This document shows, piece by piece, positions 16,481 through 53,155 of a stretch of DNA of 64,000 bases. Position 1 is the first letter of the stretch, and each line of letters begins with the position of its first letter. The notes beneath the pieces were generated by a model. That model did no database searches. It had not been told where the DNA came from and saw nothing but the letters and a program-made list of their open reading frames with translations. Origin of the DNA: Fimbriosthenelais zetlandica (lineage: Eukaryota); assembly GCA_977030845.1 (NCBI GenBank), contig OZ365110.1:26846001-26910000 (forward strand). Reading direction: 5' to 3'. Made by a program: the position numbers and the translations under genes.

Positions 16481-18910
16481 GTAAAGTTTGGTTTTTATCT
16501 CATTCATTACATCACAGACTAAATAGGGTCAATCTCCGGGCTCTCAAGTCAAAATGAATATCAGACAATGCCCGATGATCCTTACCATATGGTCCACCCC
16601 TCCCACCTCGGTCAGGCTCCATTCCTTTAGGTACATTCCATAGACACAAAAGATCCACTTTGTTGTGTCTTCCTATATAACGTAGACTGAACTAACCTTA
16701 AATGGCCCCATTTAACTCGTGCTATTTCAACTTGAAAGTCTGACCTGACTTTTTCTAAAAACAAATTGACGGTTTTTCCTCAAGTAATGAAAAAGGTCAG
16801 AGTTGAGTAGATGCCAATTCCGTCTGGCTTCACTTGAGTAGAGTAGCAAACTAGGTCTTCTCTAACCTTAAAACCGACTAACAGATGTTGGGTTTCATAT
16901 TAATTTAGAATACGCTTAAATCCAGACTTTGATCACAGAAAGAATACTATTTTTCCGGAATTTGTAGTTTCCTGGAAACATGGATGGTTTGATAAAAAAA
17001 AAAATTCATATGGTGAATTCATCTGTCTGGATTAATTTGGATCGATTTAAAAAACCCAACATATTTTGGTGAGTCCATCTGTCTGGGACTTCCAAGATGG
17101 ATTGTGAAGCCTATCTCAAACATTGGTCATAAACCATGAGACCTATTCAGGTACATATTATAACTATTTAGAAAATCGATATTTTACTTAAATCGCGAGG
17201 ATTCATTGTCATGACAGAGTGCCTCTGCCTGATTTGCTTGATTGATGATATAGATGTGCTCTGATCATTGATGATATTATGAGACTTTATGTGAAGATTA
17301 AGGCTCTCATTGTATGTCATGATCATTAATCAGGCCAGGATTGTCTCGCCTGATGGATATGGATAGTGGCAGACATTGTTGGTTTAGTCTTGTCATACTT
17401 TGTGAAGAATCACTCCATTGTTTGCCATTACTCCTCTTGTTCTTCCCACATTGTATTTGTGCTATAGATGGAACATGTCTCTTTTTACTACTCTAATATA
17501 ATCCGAGTTCCCTTTATAAGGAATACTATGGGAACTATTGTGTGCTACCTATATAATAGGGTATTTCTAGGTTACACGGATTTCGTAAGATATTTTTTAG
17601 AAACATTTTTTAATGGAAGGAAATAGAAAAGGCTTATATATTTCACTGCATTTCCAGTTCTAGAAATGAAAATTAATGGTCAAAGCATGTATCCCATCGC
17701 ATAAATGATAAACTATAAAAAAAATAGTCAAAGTTGAATCCTATTGTAATCCCAAAGAAAATCGAGAATATCCCACCACATATTTAGTTCTAAAATGAAG
17801 CATTCCAAGCTTACTTACAGTTGCAGACATTCATCTTGATATACAATGAATTGTTAAGCCTATCATTTAGCCTGGCTGTCCAGGGACCTGTAGCCCCACC
17901 CTCATCACCCAGTCCATCCCCCATTATACAGTCTACTCTGATAAAGCTAAACAGCATGGATATTGGCATGTTAATGCTTCACCTTCACTGCATCAGGATC
18001 ACGTCTGGAATCAGCAGCATGAGGGCATTTCATGGCTATGGCCTAAAACTGGTGAACCCAGTGCAAATAATATTCATGAATAAGTGTGTGGAGATAGAAC
18101 ATTTAGAAAGTATCCCCTTTCCCCAATTGCATTTCAGGTCGTTTTTTATGTCAACCTGAAATAAAGAGGGACATTATGCCACGGTTAAATGAATATGAAT
18201 ATATCCAGGGCCCTCGGATACTCCAGAAATTAAAATATGGTTTCAAAACTGTGGAAGAAAAACTTAAACCTAACAAGGTAATAAAGATTAGTATTCCCTC
18301 TTTTGCTTTGTACAAAAAAATGGTGTTTGGTGTATGGTCTAGTGTTCGAGTTATACATGCCCACTTCTGAAAGAACTGAGAGATCTTAGAGCACATAAAG
18401 CATTCCCCTTATCCTGGTTAACAACCTGAGAGGTCTGTATTTGTGGACCTTGTGCCATACTTGCAGCACGGCTACTTTCCCCCAGTTTCTCACCCTGTTT
18501 ATGGTTACTGTCACCGTTCTTGTGACCTGGGAGTACGTGAGGCAGACACCCCAGCTGCCGTCTCAGGTGTTACCCCCCCCCCCCCCCCCCCCTCCTTTTA
18601 TACAGGCCTCTCTGATATATGCCTCTTATTACCTAGGGGGCCAAGGCGAAAAAAGTCAAAATGTCTGCTGTAAAAGGTTGTTGGGTGGGAATGTGTTCTA
18701 TACAGGTCTAGCAATAAAATGTATATGGACAACCTTGTCATCTCGCTACTGGACCCTCGCAACAGGCTGTTTCCATGGCAACAATACATTTTTTTAAGGA
18801 ATTATGAAAAAAGGATGTTTTGGGCCATTACTTGATCAGAAATTGTCATAGAAAGCTAAAATTTGGTATGTTGGTGTATTATGCCAAGTTGCATTTTGGG
18901 ATGGAATTTA

Positions 18911-20320
18911 GTTGACCTTTGCCAAGGTCAAGGTCATTTGAAGTGACCTTGAACCTCTAAATTTGAGCATAAAACCATATAGGACCTTATTCCAACATCA
19001 TCCATTGCCTCATTATTGTATAGAATAGGTAAAAGTTGGTGTATTCATGTGTAGTGATATAAGAGCTTTGGATGGTGAGGTATTATGCGATAGTTTGACT
19101 GGTTGTTACCATGGTAACCAACACTTTATTTAAAAAATCCTTTTTAACAGACTGACCCCAGTGAAACATTTTTCACTCGAGTTTTAGGAGTTTAAATATA
19201 GATAGAGACTTTATATTTGGTAGGTTGATGTATCATGCCGAGATGCATTCTGGGATATAATTTGGTTGACCTTTGCCAAGGTCAAGGTCATTTGACGTGA
19301 CCTTGAAACCCTAAATTTGAGCATGAAACCACATCAGACCTTATTCCAATACCATCCATTGCCTCATTATTGTATAGAATAGTTAAAGTTGGCGTATTCC
19401 TGTGTAGTAATATAGAAACTTTGGTTGGCAAGGTATTATGCGGTAGTTTGACTGGTTGTTACCATGGTAACCAGCATTTTATGAAAAAAAAATCAGGCTG
19501 ACCCTGGTGAAACATTTATTTTCTGAGTTTTAGGAGTTTAAATAGAGATAGAGACTTTATGTTTGGTAGGTTGATGTATCATGCCGAGATGCATTCTGGG
19601 ACATAATTTGGTTGACCTTTGCCAAGGTCAAGGTCATTTGACGTGACCTTGAAACCCTCAATTTGAGCAAGAAACCATTTAAGATCTTATTCCAATACCA
19701 TCCATTGCCGTATTGTTGTATATAATAGTTAAAAGTTGGTGTATTCCTGTGTAGTAATATAGAAGAATTGGTTGGCAAGGTATCATTTGGTAGTTTGAAT
19801 GGTTGTTGCTATGGTAACCGGCACTGTATGAAAAAAATCATTTTTACCAGACTGACCCCAGTGAAACATTTTTTTCCGGAGTTTTAGGAGTTTAAATAGA
19901 GATAGAGACTTTATATTTGGTAGGTTGATGTATCATGACGAGATGCATTTTGGGATATAATTTGGTTGACCTTTGCCAAGGTCAAGGTCAGTTGACGTGA
20001 CCTTGAACCTCTAAATTTGAGCATAAAACCATATAGGACCTTATTCCAATACCATCCATTGCCTCATTATTGTATAGAATAGTTAAAAGTTGGTGTATTC
20101 ATGTGTAGTAATATAGGAGCTTTGGATGGTGAGGTATTATTTGGTAGTTTGACTGGTTGTTACCATGGTAACCAACACTTTATTAAAAAAATCCTTTTAA
20201 ACAGACCAACCCTGGTGAAACATGTTTCACTCGAGTTTAAATATAGATAGAGACTTTATATTTGGTAGGTTGATGTATCATGCCGAGATGCATTCTGGGA
20301 TTTGGTTGACCTTTGCCAAG
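18911..20320 (+). repeat. Left-arm tandem array: four ~350-bp units plus a stub
   Basis: Marker GTTGACCTTTGCCAAG at 18911, 19265, 19611, 19965, 20305 (spacing 354, 346, 354, 340). Confidence 0.95.
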
Positions 20321-20374
20321 TTTTTGGAAGAACCACATATGGGTCTTGAGGGTGTCAAATTGGTTGCTTGGGAG

Positions 20375-22415
20375 ATATGATCTTCCTGGTCAAGATATGT
20401 CGACCCTCCTCAATATTTGGCCCTTGCCGCTCAAGATATATGTACATTTCTGTCCAAAACATGGCCCTTCCTGCCCAGTATATGACCCTTCCCACTTAAG
20501 ATTTGGGCCTTTCAGTCCTATACCTAACCTTTCCAGCTCAACATATAGTCCTTCCACCTCAATATCTGGCCTTCCTGACCAAGATATGTCCCTTATTCCT
20601 GTCCTATACCTGACCTTTCCAGCTCAAGATCTGGCCTTCCAGCTTAATATCTGGGCCTTCCTGACCAAGATGTGGCCCTTCCCCCTCAATATCTGGCCCT
20701 TCCTGACCATTCCAGTTCAGGATAGGGACCTTCCTGTGCAAGAGCTGGCCCTTGTAACTCAACATCTGGACCTTCCATCATAATATCTGGCCCATCCTGC
20801 CTAAGACATGGCCCTTCCACCTCAATATCTCGTCATTCCAGCTCAAGATAGGGCCCTTCCATCATAATATCTGGCCTTTCCCACCCAAGACCTGGACCTT
20901 CCTCCTTAATATCTGGTCGTTCCAGCTCAATATATGACCCTTCCAGTTCAAGATATAGCCCTTCGAACTCAGGTCAACATCTGGACCTTCCCTCATAATA
21001 TCTTTCTGCCTAAGACATGGCCCTTGCACCAGAATATCTGGTTCATCCAACTCAAGATATACCCTGAGAGTTCAGGATAGGCCCTTCATGTCCAAGATCT
21101 GGCCCTTACTGCCTCAGATATGGTCCTTCCAGCTCTCACGATATGACCCTTCCAGCTTACGATATGTCCCCTCCTGCCAAAGATATGGCCCTTCCAGCAC
21201 AAGATATGGCCCTTCAAGCTCAACATCTCGCTCTTCCATCATAATATATGGTCCTTTCAAATCACATCTGGCCCTTCCATCATATCTGGCCCTTCCTGCC
21301 AAGATATGACCCTTCCAGCTCAGATTAGGGCCCTTACTGCTCAAAATATGGCTCTTACTGTTCAGGATGGACCAGATATTGAGCGCAAGGGGCAGATCTT
21401 GGGCAAGAAGGATATGTCATTGAGCTGAAAGGATATGTCATGGGCAAGAAAGGAGATGGGGTGTCCTATATATGTCAAATTATGTAATTCCGGAATAGGA
21501 ATATTTAAGTAAAGAAATAGGATGAGATCACTTCCAACAGTTTCAATAATTGAGGATAGGCATGTATATTTTACACCATATTACTCATTATACTGTAGAT
21601 AAGGCTTAATGAGATTAAGTAAGTCCTAAACACTTTAGTCAAATATAATTTTAACCGTTTCAAAGGATTTGTCATCGTCAAATGGACCCAAATTGCAGTC
21701 AAAATCTTTAGAGGGATACATGTATACGAAAAAGTGCAAATTTATATGGCCCTTCTGCCAAAGATTTGCCCCTTCCAACTCATCACCTGGCCCATCCGAT
21801 CCAAGCTCTGACCCTTTCAGATCAAGATACAACCCTTACTGCCCAAGATCTGGCCCTCCCAGCTCAATAACTGTCCCCTCCTGTCAAATATGTGATCTGG
21901 TTAGCTCAAGATATTAGCCTTCCAGCTCATGATAAGGCCATCTGCCCCATACAGCTTACAATCTGGCCCTGTCTGCCAAATATGACCCAGGTCAAAATCT
22001 GCTCTTTTCAGCTTAACATGTGGCCTTTCCAGTTTAAAATAAGGTCCTTCTTGTCCAAGATTTGCACATTCCAACCCTTCTAGTCCAATATTGGACATTT
22101 CCAGCTCAACATTTTCAGTCAAAAATATGGCCCTTGGAGCTCAAGATAAGGCCCTTATTGCTCACCATCTGGTCCTTCCTATGCAATACCTGGCCCTGCT
22201 CGCCTAGTACCCTTCGCCCAGTACCCTTTGACTCTTCCTGTCAGAGATCTGACCGTTCCAGCTCAGGAACTGGCCCTTCCTGTCAAGGATATGTGCCCTC
22301 CGGCTCAAAATATGACCATCCTGGCCATTCCAGCTTAATATCTAGCCCTTCATGTCCAATACATGACCCTTGTAGTTCAAGATCTGGCCCTTCCAGCTCA
22401 AGATCTATCCCATAA
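20375..22415. repeat. Degenerate 21-bp minisatellite (consensus about GCTCAAGATATGGCCCTTCCA) in two blocks with an inverted patch and an AT-rich spacer
   Basis: Forward units about 20375-21369 and 21745-22415. About four reverse-orientation units at 21370-21447. Unique AT-rich DNA about 21460-21740. Confidence 0.9.
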
Positions 22416-22544
22416 TACAATGTACCTGGCATTCCAAAAGTGGTGTACACAGACATACATTTTTTTTTAATTATATTTAATAATTAGACAATGGGTCAGA
22501 TTGAAAAAGGGATTTTGTGATATTTTATGTTGAAATTTATGGGT

Positions 22545-23899
22545 TCATGATCACCACATATCATATGACAAAATATAAAGTCACTATCTACAATTATTGT
22601 GACTCCTTAAACTCAAAAATTGATATAAACTGAGAGTTACCATGGCAACAACCACTCAAACCACCAAATAATACCTCGTCAATCAAAGCTTCTATATTAC
22701 TACACATGAATAGACCAACTTTTACCTATTCTATACAATAATGAGGCAATGGATGGTATTGGAATAAGGTCCTATATGGTTTTATGCTCAAATTTAGAGG
22801 TTCAAGGTCACGTCAAATGAACTTGACCTTGGCAAAGGTCCACCAAATTATATTCCAAAATGCATCTCGTCATGATACATCAACCTACCAAATATAAAGT
22901 CTCTATCTCTATTTAAACTCCTAAAACTCCGGAAAAAAATGTTTCACCGCGGTCAGTCTGGTAAAAATGATTTTTTTTCATAAAGTGCCGGTTACCATAG
23001 CAACAACCATTCAAACTACCAAATGATACCTTGCCAACCAATTCTTCTATATTACTACACATGAATACACCAACTTTTAACTATTCTATACAATAATGCG
23101 GCAATGGATGGTATTGGAATAAGATCTTAAACGGTTTCTTGCTCAAATTTAGGGTTTCAAGGTCACGTCAAATGACCTTGACCTTGGCAAAGGTCAACCA
23201 AATTATGTCCCAGAATGCATCTCGGCATGATACATCAACCTACCAAATATAAAGTCTCTATCTCTATTTAAACTCCTAAAACTCAGAAAATAAATGTTTC
23301 ACCAGGGTCAGCCTGATTTTTTTTTCCATAAAATGCTGGTTACCATGGTAACAACCAGTCAAACTATCGCATAATACCTTGCCAACCAAAGTTTCTATAT
23401 TACTACACATGAATACGCCAACTTTAACTATTCTATACAATAATGAGGCAATGGATGGTATTGGAATAAGGTCTGATGTGGTTTCTTGCTCAAATTTAGA
23501 GGTTCAAGGTCACGTCAACTGACCTTGACCTTGGCAAAGGTCAACCAAATTATATCCCAGAATGCATCTCGGCATGATACATCAACCTACCAAATATAAA
23601 GTCTCTATCTATATTTAAACTCCTAAAACTCGAGTGAAACATGTTTCACTGGGGTCAGTCTGTTAAAAAGGATTTTTTAAATAAAGTGTTGGTTACCATG
23701 GTAACAACCAGTCAAACTATCGCATAATACCTCACCATCCAAAGCTCTTATATCACTACACATGAATACACCAACTTTTACCTATTCTATACAATAATGA
23801 GGCAATGGATGGTGTTGGAATAAGGTCCTATATGGTTTTATGCTCAAATTTAGAGGTTCAAGGTCACTTCAAATGACCTTGACCTTGGCAAAGGTCAAC
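22545..23899 (-). repeat. Right-arm tandem array: four inverted ~350-bp units, innermost diverged
   Basis: Marker ends at 22843, 23198, 23545, 23899 (spacing 355, 347, 354), mirroring the left arm. Confidence 0.93.
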
Positions 23900-25333
23900 T
23901 AAATTCCATCCCAATATGCAACTTGGCATAATACACCAACATACCAAATTTTAGCTTTCTATGACAATTTCTGATCAAGTAATGGCCCAAAACATCCTTT
24001 TTTCATAATTCCTTAAAAAAATGCATTGTTGCCATGGAAACGGCCTGTTGCGAGGGTCCAGTAGCGAGATGACAAGGTTGTCCATATACATTTTATTGCT
24101 AGACCTGTATAGAACACATTCCCACCCAACAACCTTTTACAGCAGACATTTTCACTTTTTGCCCAAAATTGGCCTTTGGCCCCCTAGGTATATGGGCATG
24201 TTAATCTCATACAGGTCTCATACCGTGAAACCCTGTGGTATCCGCTCCTCCCAAATTTTAATTTTTCAGGTTTTCTGGTTCTCCTGATTGATTTCTTGAA
24301 CCATCAAAGTCCCTCAAATATTATTTCGGTGCCTACTGCCAAAATATTTTATTTTTATCCAGAATATCGATTAGGTGTTTGTACTTCTAAATTAGAAGCT
24401 GCTGTGCCCTTGGAAGACTTCTATACATTATTTACACCTCTCTTCCAGGTGAAGGGTCTTGTATTTTCTAGCCAGCCATAACAATGTCGAAGTATTTCCT
24501 TTGTACAGCTCAATTTTACATGTTTCTGTATCTCAGATCTTGGGGTTAGGGAGTAGGGGACACCTTTATATGTTTTTGGCTATCTGTAGAACTGATCTTT
24601 CAATCTTTCATCCCCGGTTTTATCTGACCATTTGAGTGAACTGAGTTGAGGAACCTCCCTGTCCGCCCACATAACCTTATTAGTGAAAATTAATAATAGG
24701 ACCAACTCCCCGACTGTTCTATGATTAGCTTAATCGATGTTACCCCAGCCCTGATTAACCAACCATTTTATCTGTCATACGAAACATATTTGTCGGATGA
24801 CTATTATGATTTCCTTCTGCCTCAAATGATGCTGGTAGATTTATTTCAGCTAATCTGTACTATATTGTAGTTCTACAAGGCATTATTATTGGTGATAACA
24901 GATCTTATTCTGTGTGTTGAAGTGAAGAATATTGTCACGCTAGATTGTCACGTTGACACCTAAATTGCTTGAGGTGTTCTGCATCAAAACCCAGGAGCGT
25001 TGTGTATAGAGGAAACATGCTATAGATTCGGCATTCCGATTACTATTTTGAAAAAATCAGATTGAGGGGATTTTCAGGGGGCTGAACCACTTTATAAAAT
25101 TTTAATTTCTCATGATTGCAAATGAGTTTGAATTCTCAATTTTAAATATTTCATGTACAAATGGTTAAATTGCCTCTCCATCTCAGTCTAAAATGGTGCT
25201 GTTTCTGCCTTATACTTTACAGTAAAAAATTCATTTGTTGGAAGTTATAATGAATTGAGTTTAGTGTCTGGGAGTGTTTCGCCTACCTGCAGTATCCATT
25301 GTGATCTTTGAGAGATTGAGTTTTCTCATTATA

Positions 25334-52384: not shown

Positions 52385-52552
52385 ATGCCCAGCACACAGC
52401 CAATGGCGACACCCGGACGGGCACCAAAGCCCCGCGCTCGCCTACCACCGAGAGGAAACCAAGCCGATTCGCAACCCTCGGCAAATTATTCAAACCCTGG
52501 AAATGGAAGAGGCGGAAAAAACCGAGCGAGAAAATCGAGGCCAAGGCAGTGG
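52385..52552 (+). CDS. PHACTR: PHACTR exon with conserved basic/NLS motif (SRFATLGKLFKPWKWKRRKK)
   Basis: Acceptor atatttcag| at 52384, donor G|gtaagt at 52553; 168 nt, phase 1-1. The translation matches the hallmark F-x-x-L-G-[RK]-[IL]-F-K-P-W-K-W-[RK]-[RK]-K-K segment of PHACTR1-4. This frame is not in the supplied ORF track. Confidence 0.95.
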
Positions 52553-52795
52553 GTAAGTCTCAGTGCAATAGCAATCCATGTCCTATGGCCAAACTATTAG
52601 AAGCTGACCAAACAGACAGACAAATGGAAAAATGAATATTACATTCGGCTGCAGATCTGCTATTTATTGAGATTAATAAGTCATTGGGTATTTCTTCCGA
52701 TTCATAAAAATAAGTTCCATCTGCCCGTTGGGTTGGTGTAGGCCTCCTCTTTAATTTCTGGGAGAAATAGGTTGACTAAAGTTTAAGTTAATTTC

Positions 52796-52859
52796 ATGTG
52801 GAAGGTCGCCAGTTCGAACCTCGGCCTGGTCAAACCAAAGGTACTGGTGGCTCCCTCGT
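52796..52859 (+). mobile_element. Degraded fragment of the same SINE family
   Basis: TGTGGAAGGTCGCCAGTTCGAACCTCGGCCTGGTCAAACCAAAG-GTACTGGTGGCTCCCTCG aligns to about 30036-30110 with one internal deletion. Confidence 0.75.
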
Positions 52860-53053
52860 GAGGCTCCATTTATTGAGCTTGATAATAATCCGATGATTGG
52901 TCCGATTCATATGATTCCCCCCTGTCTGTGAGCGGGAGCTTTTATTTCTAAGAGAAATAATTTGTCTTTAATTATCTGCAAGTATTTGATACTCTAAAAG
53001 ACACTTGTTTTTGCAGTACTTCATTTCAGTCTTGGTTTCTCTTTGATTTTCAG

Positions 53054-53155
53054 AACTTGAAAGGCAAATGTCTTTACGAACAACTCGGGAGGAGTTAATA
53101 AATCGGGGAGTACTAAAAGATGAGACTATACCGTCTTCTATATCAGAGGAATCAA
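53054..53155 (+). CDS. PHACTR: PHACTR exon encoding the N-terminal RPEL (G-actin-binding) motif
   Basis: Acceptor ctttgattttcag|, donor A|gtaagt; 102 nt, phase 1-1. ELERQMSLRTTREELINRGVLKDE parallels the PHACTR RPEL1 ([22 protein letters not shown]). Confidence 0.95.

What the first reader, a model, noticed from the sequence alone, without database searches (positions are those of the whole stretch)
18632..24188. 5.6-kb foldback element with satellite-built arms and a minisatellite core inside a PHACTR intron
Seen: ~1.7-kb inverted arms, each made of an outer ~280-bp domain plus four ~350-bp tandem units, enclosing ~2.2 kb dominated by an unrelated 21-bp minisatellite. No transposase. Known: foldback elements (Drosophila FB, sea-urchin TU) have modular tandem-repeat arms, but with much shorter repeat units, and they promote rearrangements. 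Inference: this is a non-autonomous foldback family with unusually long arm units, young enough that its arms remain near-identical. If the intron is transcribed through, it could form over 1.5 kb of dsRNA in the pre-mRNA.
Basis: partly seen in the sequence, partly recalled or inferred. Interest (0 to 1): 0.75.

Follow-up and report, generated by a model that had tools for sequence, protein, structure and literature searches.

The report
Gene-less foldback Academ-type jumping element
This 5.6-kb stretch is one young copy of a gene-less "foldback" DNA transposon family that is almost certainly moved by a single 12.5-kb partner elsewhere in the genome, which encodes a transposase fused to a flap-type nuclease (Academ-type). 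It is a well-preserved example of a known kind of element, not a new kind.

Summary
Window 18630-24190 (5,561 bp) has inverted arms that are 97.5% complementary over 1,523 bp. Each arm is a ~220-bp outer domain plus about four 354-bp tandem units. They enclose ~2.2 kb of degenerate 21-bp minisatellite with no coding capacity.

It is a real mobile family, not a one-off duplication. The genome holds 59 exact termini and 25 paired copies, every one flanked by a perfect 3-bp target duplication (TAT here). The copy here is the 6,217-bp standard form minus 624 bp.

A single 12,548-bp element on contig C13 shares the terminal ~300 bp (96-99%), including the same end-to-end asymmetry. It carries an intact 1,508-aa ORF with two predicted folds: an RNase-H/DDE transposase core (best matches P element and Hermes) and a C-terminal FEN/XPG-type 5' nuclease. 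Together with the 3-bp duplications, this fits the AcademX lineage.

New details:
- The centre lies in both orientations relative to the ends, with at least 3-4 independent flips and gene-conversion tracts between arms.
- Each unit keeps a palindromic AAGGTCA/TGACCTT block.
- Insertion sites favour C-N-[NNN]-N-G.

The PHACTR-intron location and dsRNA formation remain unverified. The scan noted a similar Academ foldback family on another contig of this genome.

The parts
18627..18629 (.). Left copy of the 3-bp target-site duplication (TAT)
   Evidence: Identical TAT at 24191-24193. All 25 paired family copies have a perfect 3-bp direct repeat outside the TA...TA ends.
18630..24190 (+). Whole non-autonomous element, 5,561 bp, written from the 'G-type' end to the 'A-type' end
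   Evidence: The ends are an exact 15-nt inverted repeat beginning TACCTAGGGGG. There are 59 exact termini in the genome against 0 for the reversed control. It is 98.85% identical to a 6,217-bp copy on C37 apart from a 624-bp deletion.
18630..18847 (+). G-type outer domain (non-repeated terminal ~218 bp)
   Evidence: 100% identical in eight other copies. 98% identical to the same domain of the coding C13 element. Identity to C13 falls inward from 99% to about 70-89%.
18848..20320 (+). Left tandem array, about 4.2 units of 346-362 bp
   Evidence: TRF period 354, 86% matches. All listed matches of the unit lie in or beside the family's terminus coordinates.
18912..19990 (+). Four copies, one per unit, of the conserved palindromic block TTGACCTT-n4-AAGGTCAAGGTCA-n7-TGACCTT (starts 18912, 19266, 19612, 19966)
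   Evidence: Exact 25-mer matches, with 0 expected by chance. This is the longest stretch invariant between this family's units and the diverged units of the C13 partner.
20320..20321 (.). Junction of a 624-bp internal deletion relative to the 6,217-bp standard form
   Evidence: Pairwise alignment with the C37 copy.
20321..22550 (+). Central core, non-coding and C-rich on the + strand, dominated by degenerate 21-bp minisatellite blocks (20424-21458, 21729-22434)
   Evidence: Its ORFs have no Pfam match. The core is 98-100% identical in 19 other family copies and 90-91% in two more, and 70-84% similar minisatellite occurs at many unrelated loci. It is absent from the C13 partner.
22551..23962 (-). 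Right tandem array (about four units, reverse complement of the left array)
   Evidence: TRF period 355, 3.7 copies, at 22636-23949. Inverted-repeat pairs I1-I25.
22818..23898 (-). Four copies of the same palindromic block on the minus strand (22818, 23173, 23520, 23874)
23963..24190 (-). A-type outer domain, about 228 bp. It carries the 10-bp indel (about 24161-24175) that distinguishes the two ends.
   Evidence: All 25 paired copies have an A-type end opposite the other-type end; 24 have the exact G-type end and the C39 copy has one mismatch at terminus position 16. The C13 partner has the same asymmetry.
24191..24193 (.). Right copy of the 3-bp target-site duplication (TAT)

Best explanation
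The stretch is one copy, with a 624-bp internal deletion, of a young non-autonomous cut-and-paste DNA transposon family with foldback architecture. It encodes nothing. It is most likely mobilised in trans by the 1,508-aa protein of a single 12.5-kb partner element (G000 contig C13:40786280-40798827), which has the same ends.

That protein joins three parts: an N-terminal cysteine-rich region, a DDE (RNase-H-fold) transposase core with a large helical insertion, and a C-terminal FEN/XPG-family 5' nuclease. This combination, together with 3-bp target duplications, matches the AcademX lineage of the Academ superfamily.

Shown here:
- family membership, ends and the 3-bp duplications;
- a weak symmetric target preference;
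- shared, asymmetric termini with the coding partner;
- the predicted folds and the conserved acidic residues;
- recurrent inversion of the centre and gene conversion between the arms.

Inferred:
- the DDE core cuts and joins the 3' ends, with a 3-bp stagger at the target;
- the fused flap nuclease processes the other strand or a structured intermediate;
- the palindromic AAGGTCA/TGACCTT block repeated once per 354-bp unit is a multi-copy transposase-binding site, as shown for Galileo's repeats;
- the arms stay alike through intramolecular recombination.
For: Family and ends. There are 59 exact 16-nt termini against 0 for the control. All 25 of 25 paired copies have perfect 3-bp duplications of varied sequence. 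Sizes run from 107 bp to 12.5 kb, with a mode of 6,213-6,218 bp. G is enriched at position +2 outside the duplication in 29 of 50 half-sites, p=1e-9.

Youth. Core terminal branches have a median of 0.0011 substitutions per site.

Partner. The C13 element has the same first 60 bp (100% and 98% at the two ends) and the same 10-bp end asymmetry. Identity is 96-99% over the terminal 300 bp and falls to about 70-89% further in. Its own arms are 99.3% alike over 1,049 bp. It carries an intact 1,508-aa ORF, which is the only full-length copy in the genome. A second, broken N-terminal fragment (86% identity) lies 6 kb from an unpaired A-type terminus on C21, in the same relative orientation.

Protein. 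Invariant residues are D481/D484, D659 and E914. The core model has pLDDT 84. Its best structural matches are P element transposase (Z 8.7, 340 aligned) and Hermes (Z 8.5), followed by Tn5, ISCth4, RAG1, Transib and integrases. The C-terminal model has pLDDT 86.5. Its top 17 matches (Z 9.1-12.9) are all FEN/XPG/XRN-family nucleases (XRN1, EXO1, T5 FEN, FEN1, GEN1, XPG), while unrelated folds score Z 7.4 or less. Seven conserved acidic residues are spaced as in FEN1, a comparison made from memory.

Literature. AcademX makes 3-4-bp duplications and encodes a nuclease (PMC10045372).
Against: No reference Academ transposase, Repbase or Dfam was available, so superfamily assignment rests on architecture, fold and duplication length rather than on sequence similarity to named Academ elements. 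Pfam gives only DUF6589, just below its cut-off (26.5 against 27 bits). The core's structural Z-scores (8.5-8.7) are in the range the tool itself calls middling. The C13 ORF lacks the roughly 85-aa C-terminal cysteine-rich (CXC) tail present in most relatives, so it may not be fully functional. The partner's 354-bp units are only 78-86% identical to this family's units. A weak 113-bp, 75% inverted repeat flanks the ORF inside C13. No transposition, expression or insertion polymorphism could be tested.
Confidence: 0.78

Rival explanations
1. The family belongs to another DNA-transposon superfamily that makes 3-bp duplications (CACTA/EnSpm-Chapaev, PIF/Harbinger, Zator), or to a so far unnamed one. 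Under this reading the DUF6589-plus-nuclease protein is not an Academ transposase.
For: No sequence comparison with named Academ references was possible. Pfam hits only a DUF below its cut-off. The best fold matches are P and hAT transposases with middling Z.
Against: The termini are not CACTA-like. There is no Pfam hit to Transposase_21, DDE_Tnp_4 or THAP. A single protein fusing a DDE core with an XPG/FEN nuclease, plus 3-bp duplications, is what is reported for AcademX (PMC10045372, and my recollection of Kojima 2020).
Confidence: 0.12
2. The family is extinct or is moved by some other protein. The C13 ORF would then be a passenger, a nested insertion or a crippled relic, and its resemblance at the ends would reflect common descent only.
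For: The ORF lacks the C-terminal CXC tail of its relatives. Inner arm repeats are only 78-86% identical to this family's. A weak inverted repeat flanks the ORF. The genome holds at least 20 other divergent paralogues, many with open frames.
Against: The ORF is intact over 1,508 codons. The terminal 300 bp and the end asymmetry are near-identical between partner and family. Several copies have zero-length terminal branches, which implies very recent movement. The next closest paralogue is only 33% identical. The same ORF-terminus association recurs on C21.
Confidence: 0.15
3. It is a one-off inverted duplication or an assembly artefact rather than a transposon.
For: Long near-perfect inverted repeats are a known assembly failure mode, and no reads could be laid on the region.
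Against: 25 independent loci on 10 contigs carry the same ends with different flanks and perfect 3-bp duplications.
Confidence: 0.01
4. It is a Tc1/mariner-type element with a TA target duplication.
For: Every copy is flanked by TA next to CCTAGGGGG.
Against: The 3 bp outside the TA form a perfect direct repeat in 25 of 25 copies, which by chance would occur about once in 64 per copy. So TA belongs to the inverted ends. The partner protein has no Tc1/mariner domain.
Confidence: 0.01

Closest known systems
Academ superfamily, AcademX lineage (Kapitonov and Jurka 2010; Kojima 2020, cited in PMC10045372)
   Same: 3-bp target duplications. A single large protein combines a DDE transposase with an XPG/FEN-family nuclease. 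Terminal inverted repeats are present. It occurs in marine invertebrates, and the closest named relative is a Strongylocentrotus purpuratus protein at 55% identity.
   Different: Membership by sequence could not be tested here. I do not know of 1.5-kb arms built of 354-bp tandem units, or a minisatellite-filled non-autonomous derivative, as described Academ features (from memory). The partner lacks the CXC tail of its relatives.
Galileo (P superfamily foldback-like element of Drosophila; PMC3573991, PMC3688188)
   Same: Long, internally repetitive inverted ends. There is a coding master plus many shortened derivatives, including two-end-only forms. Rearrangement and sequence exchange within and between copies are frequent. 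Transposase-binding sites are repeated in the tandem units, which is shown for Galileo and inferred here.
   Different: The superfamily differs: Galileo has a THAP domain and a P-type transposase, with 7-8-bp duplications from memory. Here there are 3-bp duplications, no THAP domain and a fused flap nuclease.
Tetris (foldback element of Drosophila virilis; PMC4079207)
   Same: Non-autonomous and modular, with arms containing about 220-bp tandem repeats. It shares its extreme ends with another element mobilised by the same unknown master.
   Different: Tetris repeats also form kb-scale satellite arrays outside the element. Here all listed matches of the 354-bp unit lie in or beside the family's terminus coordinates. 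No master is known for Tetris, whereas one is identified here.
Drosophila FB and sea-urchin TU foldback elements
   Same: Long modular inverted arms made of tandem repeats around a variable middle segment.
   Different: FB makes 9-bp duplications and is linked to a MuDR-type transposase (from memory), and its repeat units are far shorter. TU could not be compared because no sequence was available.

Membership tests
Academ (AcademX) | Target-site duplication of 3 or 4 bp | tested here: met
   25 of 25 paired copies have perfect 3-bp direct repeats. The criterion is taken from PMC10045372.
Academ (AcademX) | The autonomous element encodes a DDE transposase together with an XPG-type nuclease | tested here: met
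   The partner ORF has an RNase-H/DDE fold with invariant D, D and E residues. Its C-terminal domain matches only FEN/XPG/XRN nucleases at Z 9-13.
Academ (AcademX) | Transposase sequence similarity to reference Academ proteins or the catalytic-domain profile | not testable with these tools
   No Repbase, Dfam or Yuan-Wessler alignment was available. Kojima 2020 and Yuan and Wessler 2011 are not held. Pfam gives only DUF6589.
Non-autonomous derivative of the C13 element | Same terminal sequence and same duplication length as the autonomous element (Repbase rule: positions 1-11, at most 1 mismatch; PMC4455052) | tested here: met
   The first 60 bp are 100% and 98% identical at the two ends, the same 10-bp end asymmetry is present, and both have 3-bp duplications.
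Foldback (Drosophila FB / MuDR-related) | 9-bp target duplication (from memory) | tested here: not met
   3-bp duplications in all copies.
Foldback (structural class) | Long inverted arms built of tandem repeats, with most copies lacking coding capacity | tested here: met
P superfamily (Galileo-like) | THAP DNA-binding domain and 7-8-bp duplication | tested here: not met
   No THAP hit in the partner or in 15 relatives. Duplications are 3 bp.
Tc1/mariner | TA target duplication | tested here: not met
   TA is part of the inverted ends, and the true duplication is the 3 bp outside it.
CACTA/EnSpm and PIF/Harbinger (other 3-bp duplication superfamilies) | CACTA-type termini with a TNP2-type transposase, or TWA duplications with a DDE_Tnp_4 transposase | tested here: not met
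   The ends start TACCTAGG. Duplications are varied (17 different triplets). There are no such Pfam domains.

The most novel reading that the evidence does not exclude
The foldback arms and the fused nuclease may be co-adapted. Under this reading the partner's XPG/GEN1-like structure-specific nuclease acts on hairpin or cruciform DNA extruded by the 1.5-kb satellite arms. That would explain three things: why Academ-type families in this genome carry foldback arms, why the centre flips repeatedly, and why the arms are kept homogeneous. The pair would also be a currently active Academ system, with one intact master and very young copies, and so the first open to biochemical reconstitution.
Probability: 0.12. 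Interest if true: 0.7.

Novelty: new member of a known kind. Interest (0 to 1): 0.4.

Why it matters
As far as I know, no transposase of the Academ superfamily has been studied biochemically. This genome offers a compact natural test set:
- one intact master;
- about 25 near-identical gene-less copies;
- natural mini-elements of 107 and 363 bp;
- clear 3-bp duplications with a weak target preference.

The set could show what a flap nuclease fused to a DDE transposase does. The recurrent flips and conversion tracts give a clean natural example of how long inverted repeats keep themselves identical. For genome annotation, it explains a repeated 5.5-6.2-kb hairpin-forming structure that could otherwise be mistaken for an assembly error. 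If transcribed within a gene, the element could produce long double-stranded RNA.

Tried and rejected
Readings rejected:
- TA duplication (Tc1/mariner) was rejected by the 3-bp repeats outside the TA.
- A nested-insertion origin for the partner's ORF has only a weak 113-bp, 75% inverted repeat flanking the ORF in its favour. It was judged unlikely but is not excluded.

Searches that found nothing:
- Rfam found nothing in 18-25 kb.
- Pfam found nothing for ORFs in and around the element.
- Sequence searches of the partner protein, its C-terminus and its family profile against solved structures gave only chance-level rows.
- Foldseek on the 711-aa core found nothing significant. Only the exhaustive aligner showed the DDE fold.
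- The protein atlas gave only unnamed or DUF6589 clusters.
- The left flank is unique in the assembly, so there is no paralogous empty site.

Tools and sources that were unavailable:
- No sequencing runs were listed. As a result there is no test of long-read support, an empty allele, expression, editing or small RNAs.
- Kojima 2020 and Yuan and Wessler 2011 are not held.

The host species was not identified.
Full report
OBSERVATION.
- Inverted arms: the repeat finder reports arms of up to 843 nt at 98% complementarity. A gapped comparison joins these into one pair, window 18650-20172 against 22636-24160, with 36 mismatches and 2 gap columns in 1,525 columns and a longest perfect run of 171 bp.
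- Tandem units: each arm contains a tandem array of period 354-355 bp, with 4.2 copies on the left and 3.7 on the right.
- Core: between the arms lie about 2.2 kb of C-rich, degenerate 21-bp minisatellite.
- Coding: no ORF of 80 aa or more tested in or beside the element has a Pfam match, and Rfam finds nothing.
- Refinements: the outer non-repeated domains are about 218 and 228 bp rather than 280. The true ends are 18630 and 24190.

IT IS A TRANSPOSON FAMILY.
- Copy number: the 209-bp outer domain and the 354-bp unit each match many loci in the window's genome at 95-100%. The genome is 447 Mb in 79 contigs, and the window is C10:26846001-26910000. An exact 16-nt terminus pattern occurs 59 times, against 0 for its reversed control. 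These pair into 25 elements.
- Target duplication: every copy is preceded by TA. That TA is part of the inverted end, because the 3 bp outside it form a perfect direct repeat in all 25 paired copies, with 17 different triplets. The target-site duplication is therefore 3 bp; it is TAT at 18627-18629 and 24191-24193.
- Target preference: insertion sites show a symmetric preference, with G at the second position outside the duplication in 29 of 50 half-sites (p about 1e-9). The target is roughly C-N-[NNN]-N-G around an AT-rich triplet.
- End asymmetry: the two ends are not identical. One (A-type) carries a 10-bp indel at positions 16-30. Every paired copy has one end of each type (the C39 copy's G-type end has one mismatch at terminus position 16), so all descend from one asymmetric master.
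- Sizes: they range from 107 and 363 bp (ends only) through 1.8-3.6 kb to a mode of 6,213-6,218 bp (eight copies). Larger copies carry nested insertions, for example a retroelement with reverse transcriptase in the C11 copy.
- The window's copy: it is 98.85% identical to the C37 copy. It differs mainly by a 624-bp internal deletion at window 20320/20321 and the loss of one 21-bp unit.
- Age: core sequences differ very little. The median terminal branch is 0.0011 substitutions per site, several are zero, and the window's copy is 0.0027.

THE CODING PARTNER. One element, C13:40786280-40798827 (12,548 bp, duplication GTA), has the same ends.
- Shared termini: its first 60 bp are 100% (G end) and 98% (A end) identical to the family's, including the 10-bp asymmetry. 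Identity is 99, 96, 96 and 90% over successive 100-bp windows, then drops to about 70-89% in the tandem units.
- Own arms: they contain about three 356-bp units and are 99.3% alike over 1,049 bp.
- Interior: the 10.3-kb interior shares nothing with the family's minisatellite core.
- ORF: the interior contains an uninterrupted 1,508-aa ORF. This is the only full-length copy in the genome. A broken fragment (86% identity, residues 1-109) lies 6 kb from an unpaired A-type terminus on C21, in the same relative orientation. At least 20 divergent paralogues (24-33% identity) also exist, many with open frames.

WHAT THE PROTEIN IS.
- Sequence searches: Pfam gives only DUF6589, just under its cut-off; 10 of 16 family members hit it. 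Relatives of about 1,590 aa at 39-56% identity include Strongylocentrotus purpuratus XP_030833483. Sequence searches against solved structures find nothing.
- Catalytic core: the alignment shows invariant D481/D484, D659 and E914. A model of residues 400-1110 (pLDDT 84) puts these on strand 1, just after strand 4, and on a later helix of an RNase-H-like fold, with a helical insertion of about 230 residues. Exhaustive structural comparison ranks P element transposase (Z 8.7, 340 residues aligned) and Hermes (Z 8.5) first, followed by Tn5, ISCth4, RAG1, Transib and retroviral integrases. Foldseek alone missed this.
- Nuclease domain: a model of residues 1134-1508 (pLDDT 86.5) matches only the FEN/XPG/XRN 5'-nuclease superfamily at the top. 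Those 17 matches score Z 9.1-12.9 and include XRN1, EXO1, T5 flap endonuclease, FEN1, GEN1, XPG and T4 RNase H. Unrelated folds score Z 7.4 or less. Seven conserved acidic residues (D1148, D1191, E1295, D1297, D1322, D1324, D1380) are spaced as the metal ligands of FEN1 are, a comparison made from memory.
- Missing tail: the ORF lacks the roughly 85-aa cysteine-rich tail of most relatives, and no such tail lies downstream in any frame.

CLASSIFICATION. A DDE transposase fused to an XPG-type nuclease, making 3-bp duplications, is what is reported for the AcademX lineage. PMC10045372 states that AcademX makes 3- or 4-bp duplications, that AcademH makes 9- or 10-bp ones, and that the two lineages encode a nuclease and a helicase respectively. 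The single-protein fusion is my recollection of Kojima 2020, which is not held here. Direct sequence comparison with named Academ references was not possible, so I hold the superfamily assignment at about 0.8.
- Drosophila FB: 9-bp duplication, from memory. Excluded as a family.
- P/Galileo: THAP domain and 7-8-bp duplication. Excluded.
- Tc1/mariner: TA duplication. Excluded.
- CACTA and PIF/Harbinger: excluded.
Foldback here names an architecture, as it does for Galileo (PMC3573991) and Tetris (PMC4079207).

HOW IT MOST LIKELY WORKS.
- Shown: the element has no gene. It shares the cis-acting terminal 300 bp with an intact coding master. It inserts with a 3-bp stagger.
- Inferred: the master's protein binds the ends and moves the element by cut-and-paste. 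The DDE core acts on the 3' ends, and the flap nuclease acts on the other strand or on a structured intermediate.
- Candidate binding site: within each 354-bp unit, the longest block invariant between this family and the diverged units of the master is a double palindrome, TTGACCTT-n4-AAGGTCAAGGTCA-n7-TGACCTT. It occurs eight times in the window, four per arm, against none expected by chance. By analogy with the THAP sites repeated in Galileo's arms (PMC3688188), I take it as the likely multi-copy transposase-binding site. This is untested.

- Flips: relative to the asymmetric ends, the central segment lies in one orientation in 12 copies, including this one, and in the opposite orientation in 6. 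On a tree of the core the two states are intermixed. At least 3 changes are forced by well-supported branches and 4 are most parsimonious. One sister pair with 100/100 support differs in state.
- Crossovers and conversion: arm-specific variants show that the switch points differ between copies. Some arms also carry conversion tracts from the other arm; for example, the C11_362 A-arm is G-type over columns 1041-1542, which explains its 99.5% arm identity.
- Consequence: the arms recombine with each other repeatedly. Their near-identity therefore reflects homogenisation as well as youth.

CONTEXT.
- PHACTR-type coding sequence lies on the + strand: an exon with the KPWKW motif near window 52.4 kb, an RPEL repeat at 53056-53124, and three more RPEL repeats 34 kb beyond the window.
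- No recognisable exon or other gene was found in 1-52 kb. The element may therefore lie in a 5' intron or upstream of the gene; this is open.
- If transcribed, the arms would pair almost completely. A 700+700-nt test hairpin folds at -1,242 kcal/mol with 97% of bases paired. No RNA data could be consulted.

EARLIER NOTES OF THE SCAN. After I had reached the Academ reading, a word search showed two notes on another contig of this genome. One describes a 5.9-kb gene-less foldback family with an 11.3-kb Academ-type partner. The sizes differ from this family's, so it is probably a sister family. I could not fetch it to check, and I count it as a lead, not as evidence.

VERDICT. This is a young, well-preserved, non-autonomous Academ-type foldback transposon with an identifiable, apparently intact master: a new member of a known kind. 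Interest is moderate. It rests on the possibly live Academ system and on the clear record of flip-flop recombination.

Noticed in passing
window 18912-19990 and 22818-23898: The conserved block in each 354-bp unit contains CCAAGGTCA and TCAAGGTCA, which look like extended nuclear-receptor half-sites of the ERR/FTZ-F1 type (from memory). With eight blocks the element could act as a cluster of such sites near the PHACTR-like gene. This may equally be coincidence with a transposase site.
   Followed up: no
G000 C27:6734941, C13:30974017, C25:30445136, C1:31552020 and many others: The 21-bp minisatellite of the core occurs at many loci outside this family at 70-84% identity, with 2,146 first-look candidates. 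The core is therefore a captured or shared genome-wide minisatellite, not something derived from the coding partner.
   Followed up: partly
G000 C10:35664451-35664557 (L052) and C25:24269191-24269553 (L051): These are natural mini-elements of 107 bp and 363 bp, consisting of little more than the two ends. Each has a perfect 3-bp duplication (CTG, ACA). They may be useful as minimal substrates.
   Followed up: partly
G000 C11:38512706-38522737 (L043:1651-4374): One family copy carries a 4-kb nested retroelement, with a 393-aa ORF that has a CCCH zinc finger and a 483-aa ORF with a reverse-transcriptase domain.
   Followed up: partly
G000, about 30 loci listed (e.g. C37:23182245-23186708, C21:2859041-2863117, C13:34490331-34494611): There are many divergent paralogues of the DUF6589-plus-nuclease protein (24-33% identity), several with open frames of 1,300-1,600 aa. 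This points to a diverse and possibly active Academ-like population in this genome.
   Followed up: no
G000 C15:755118 and C15:1024333; C21:3026564 and C21:3717440; C10:13257952; C10:39296324; C34:152663; C37:9562260; C38:986579: Nine termini have no exact partner nearby, including two A-type ends 269 kb apart on C15. They could be truncated copies, ends with point mutations, or products of rearrangement between copies.
   Followed up: no
G000 C21:3711069-3711401: An 86%-identical fragment of the transposase N-terminus (residues 1-109) lies 6 kb inside an unpaired A-type terminus, in the same orientation as in the C13 element. It is probably a second, decayed coding copy.
   Followed up: partly
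window 52492-53124 (+ strand): PHACTR-type exons: one holding the motif at 52492, encoding ...FATLGKLFKPWKWKRRKK..., and an RPEL repeat at 53056-53124. Three further RPEL repeats lie at C10:26943994-26944924, beyond the window.
   Followed up: partly
L041/L042 composite 2043-2148 and 8609-8714 (C13 element interior): A weak inverted repeat (113 bp, 75%) flanks the transposase ORF inside the coding partner. It may be a decayed inner tier of the arms or the remains of older ends.
   Followed up: no
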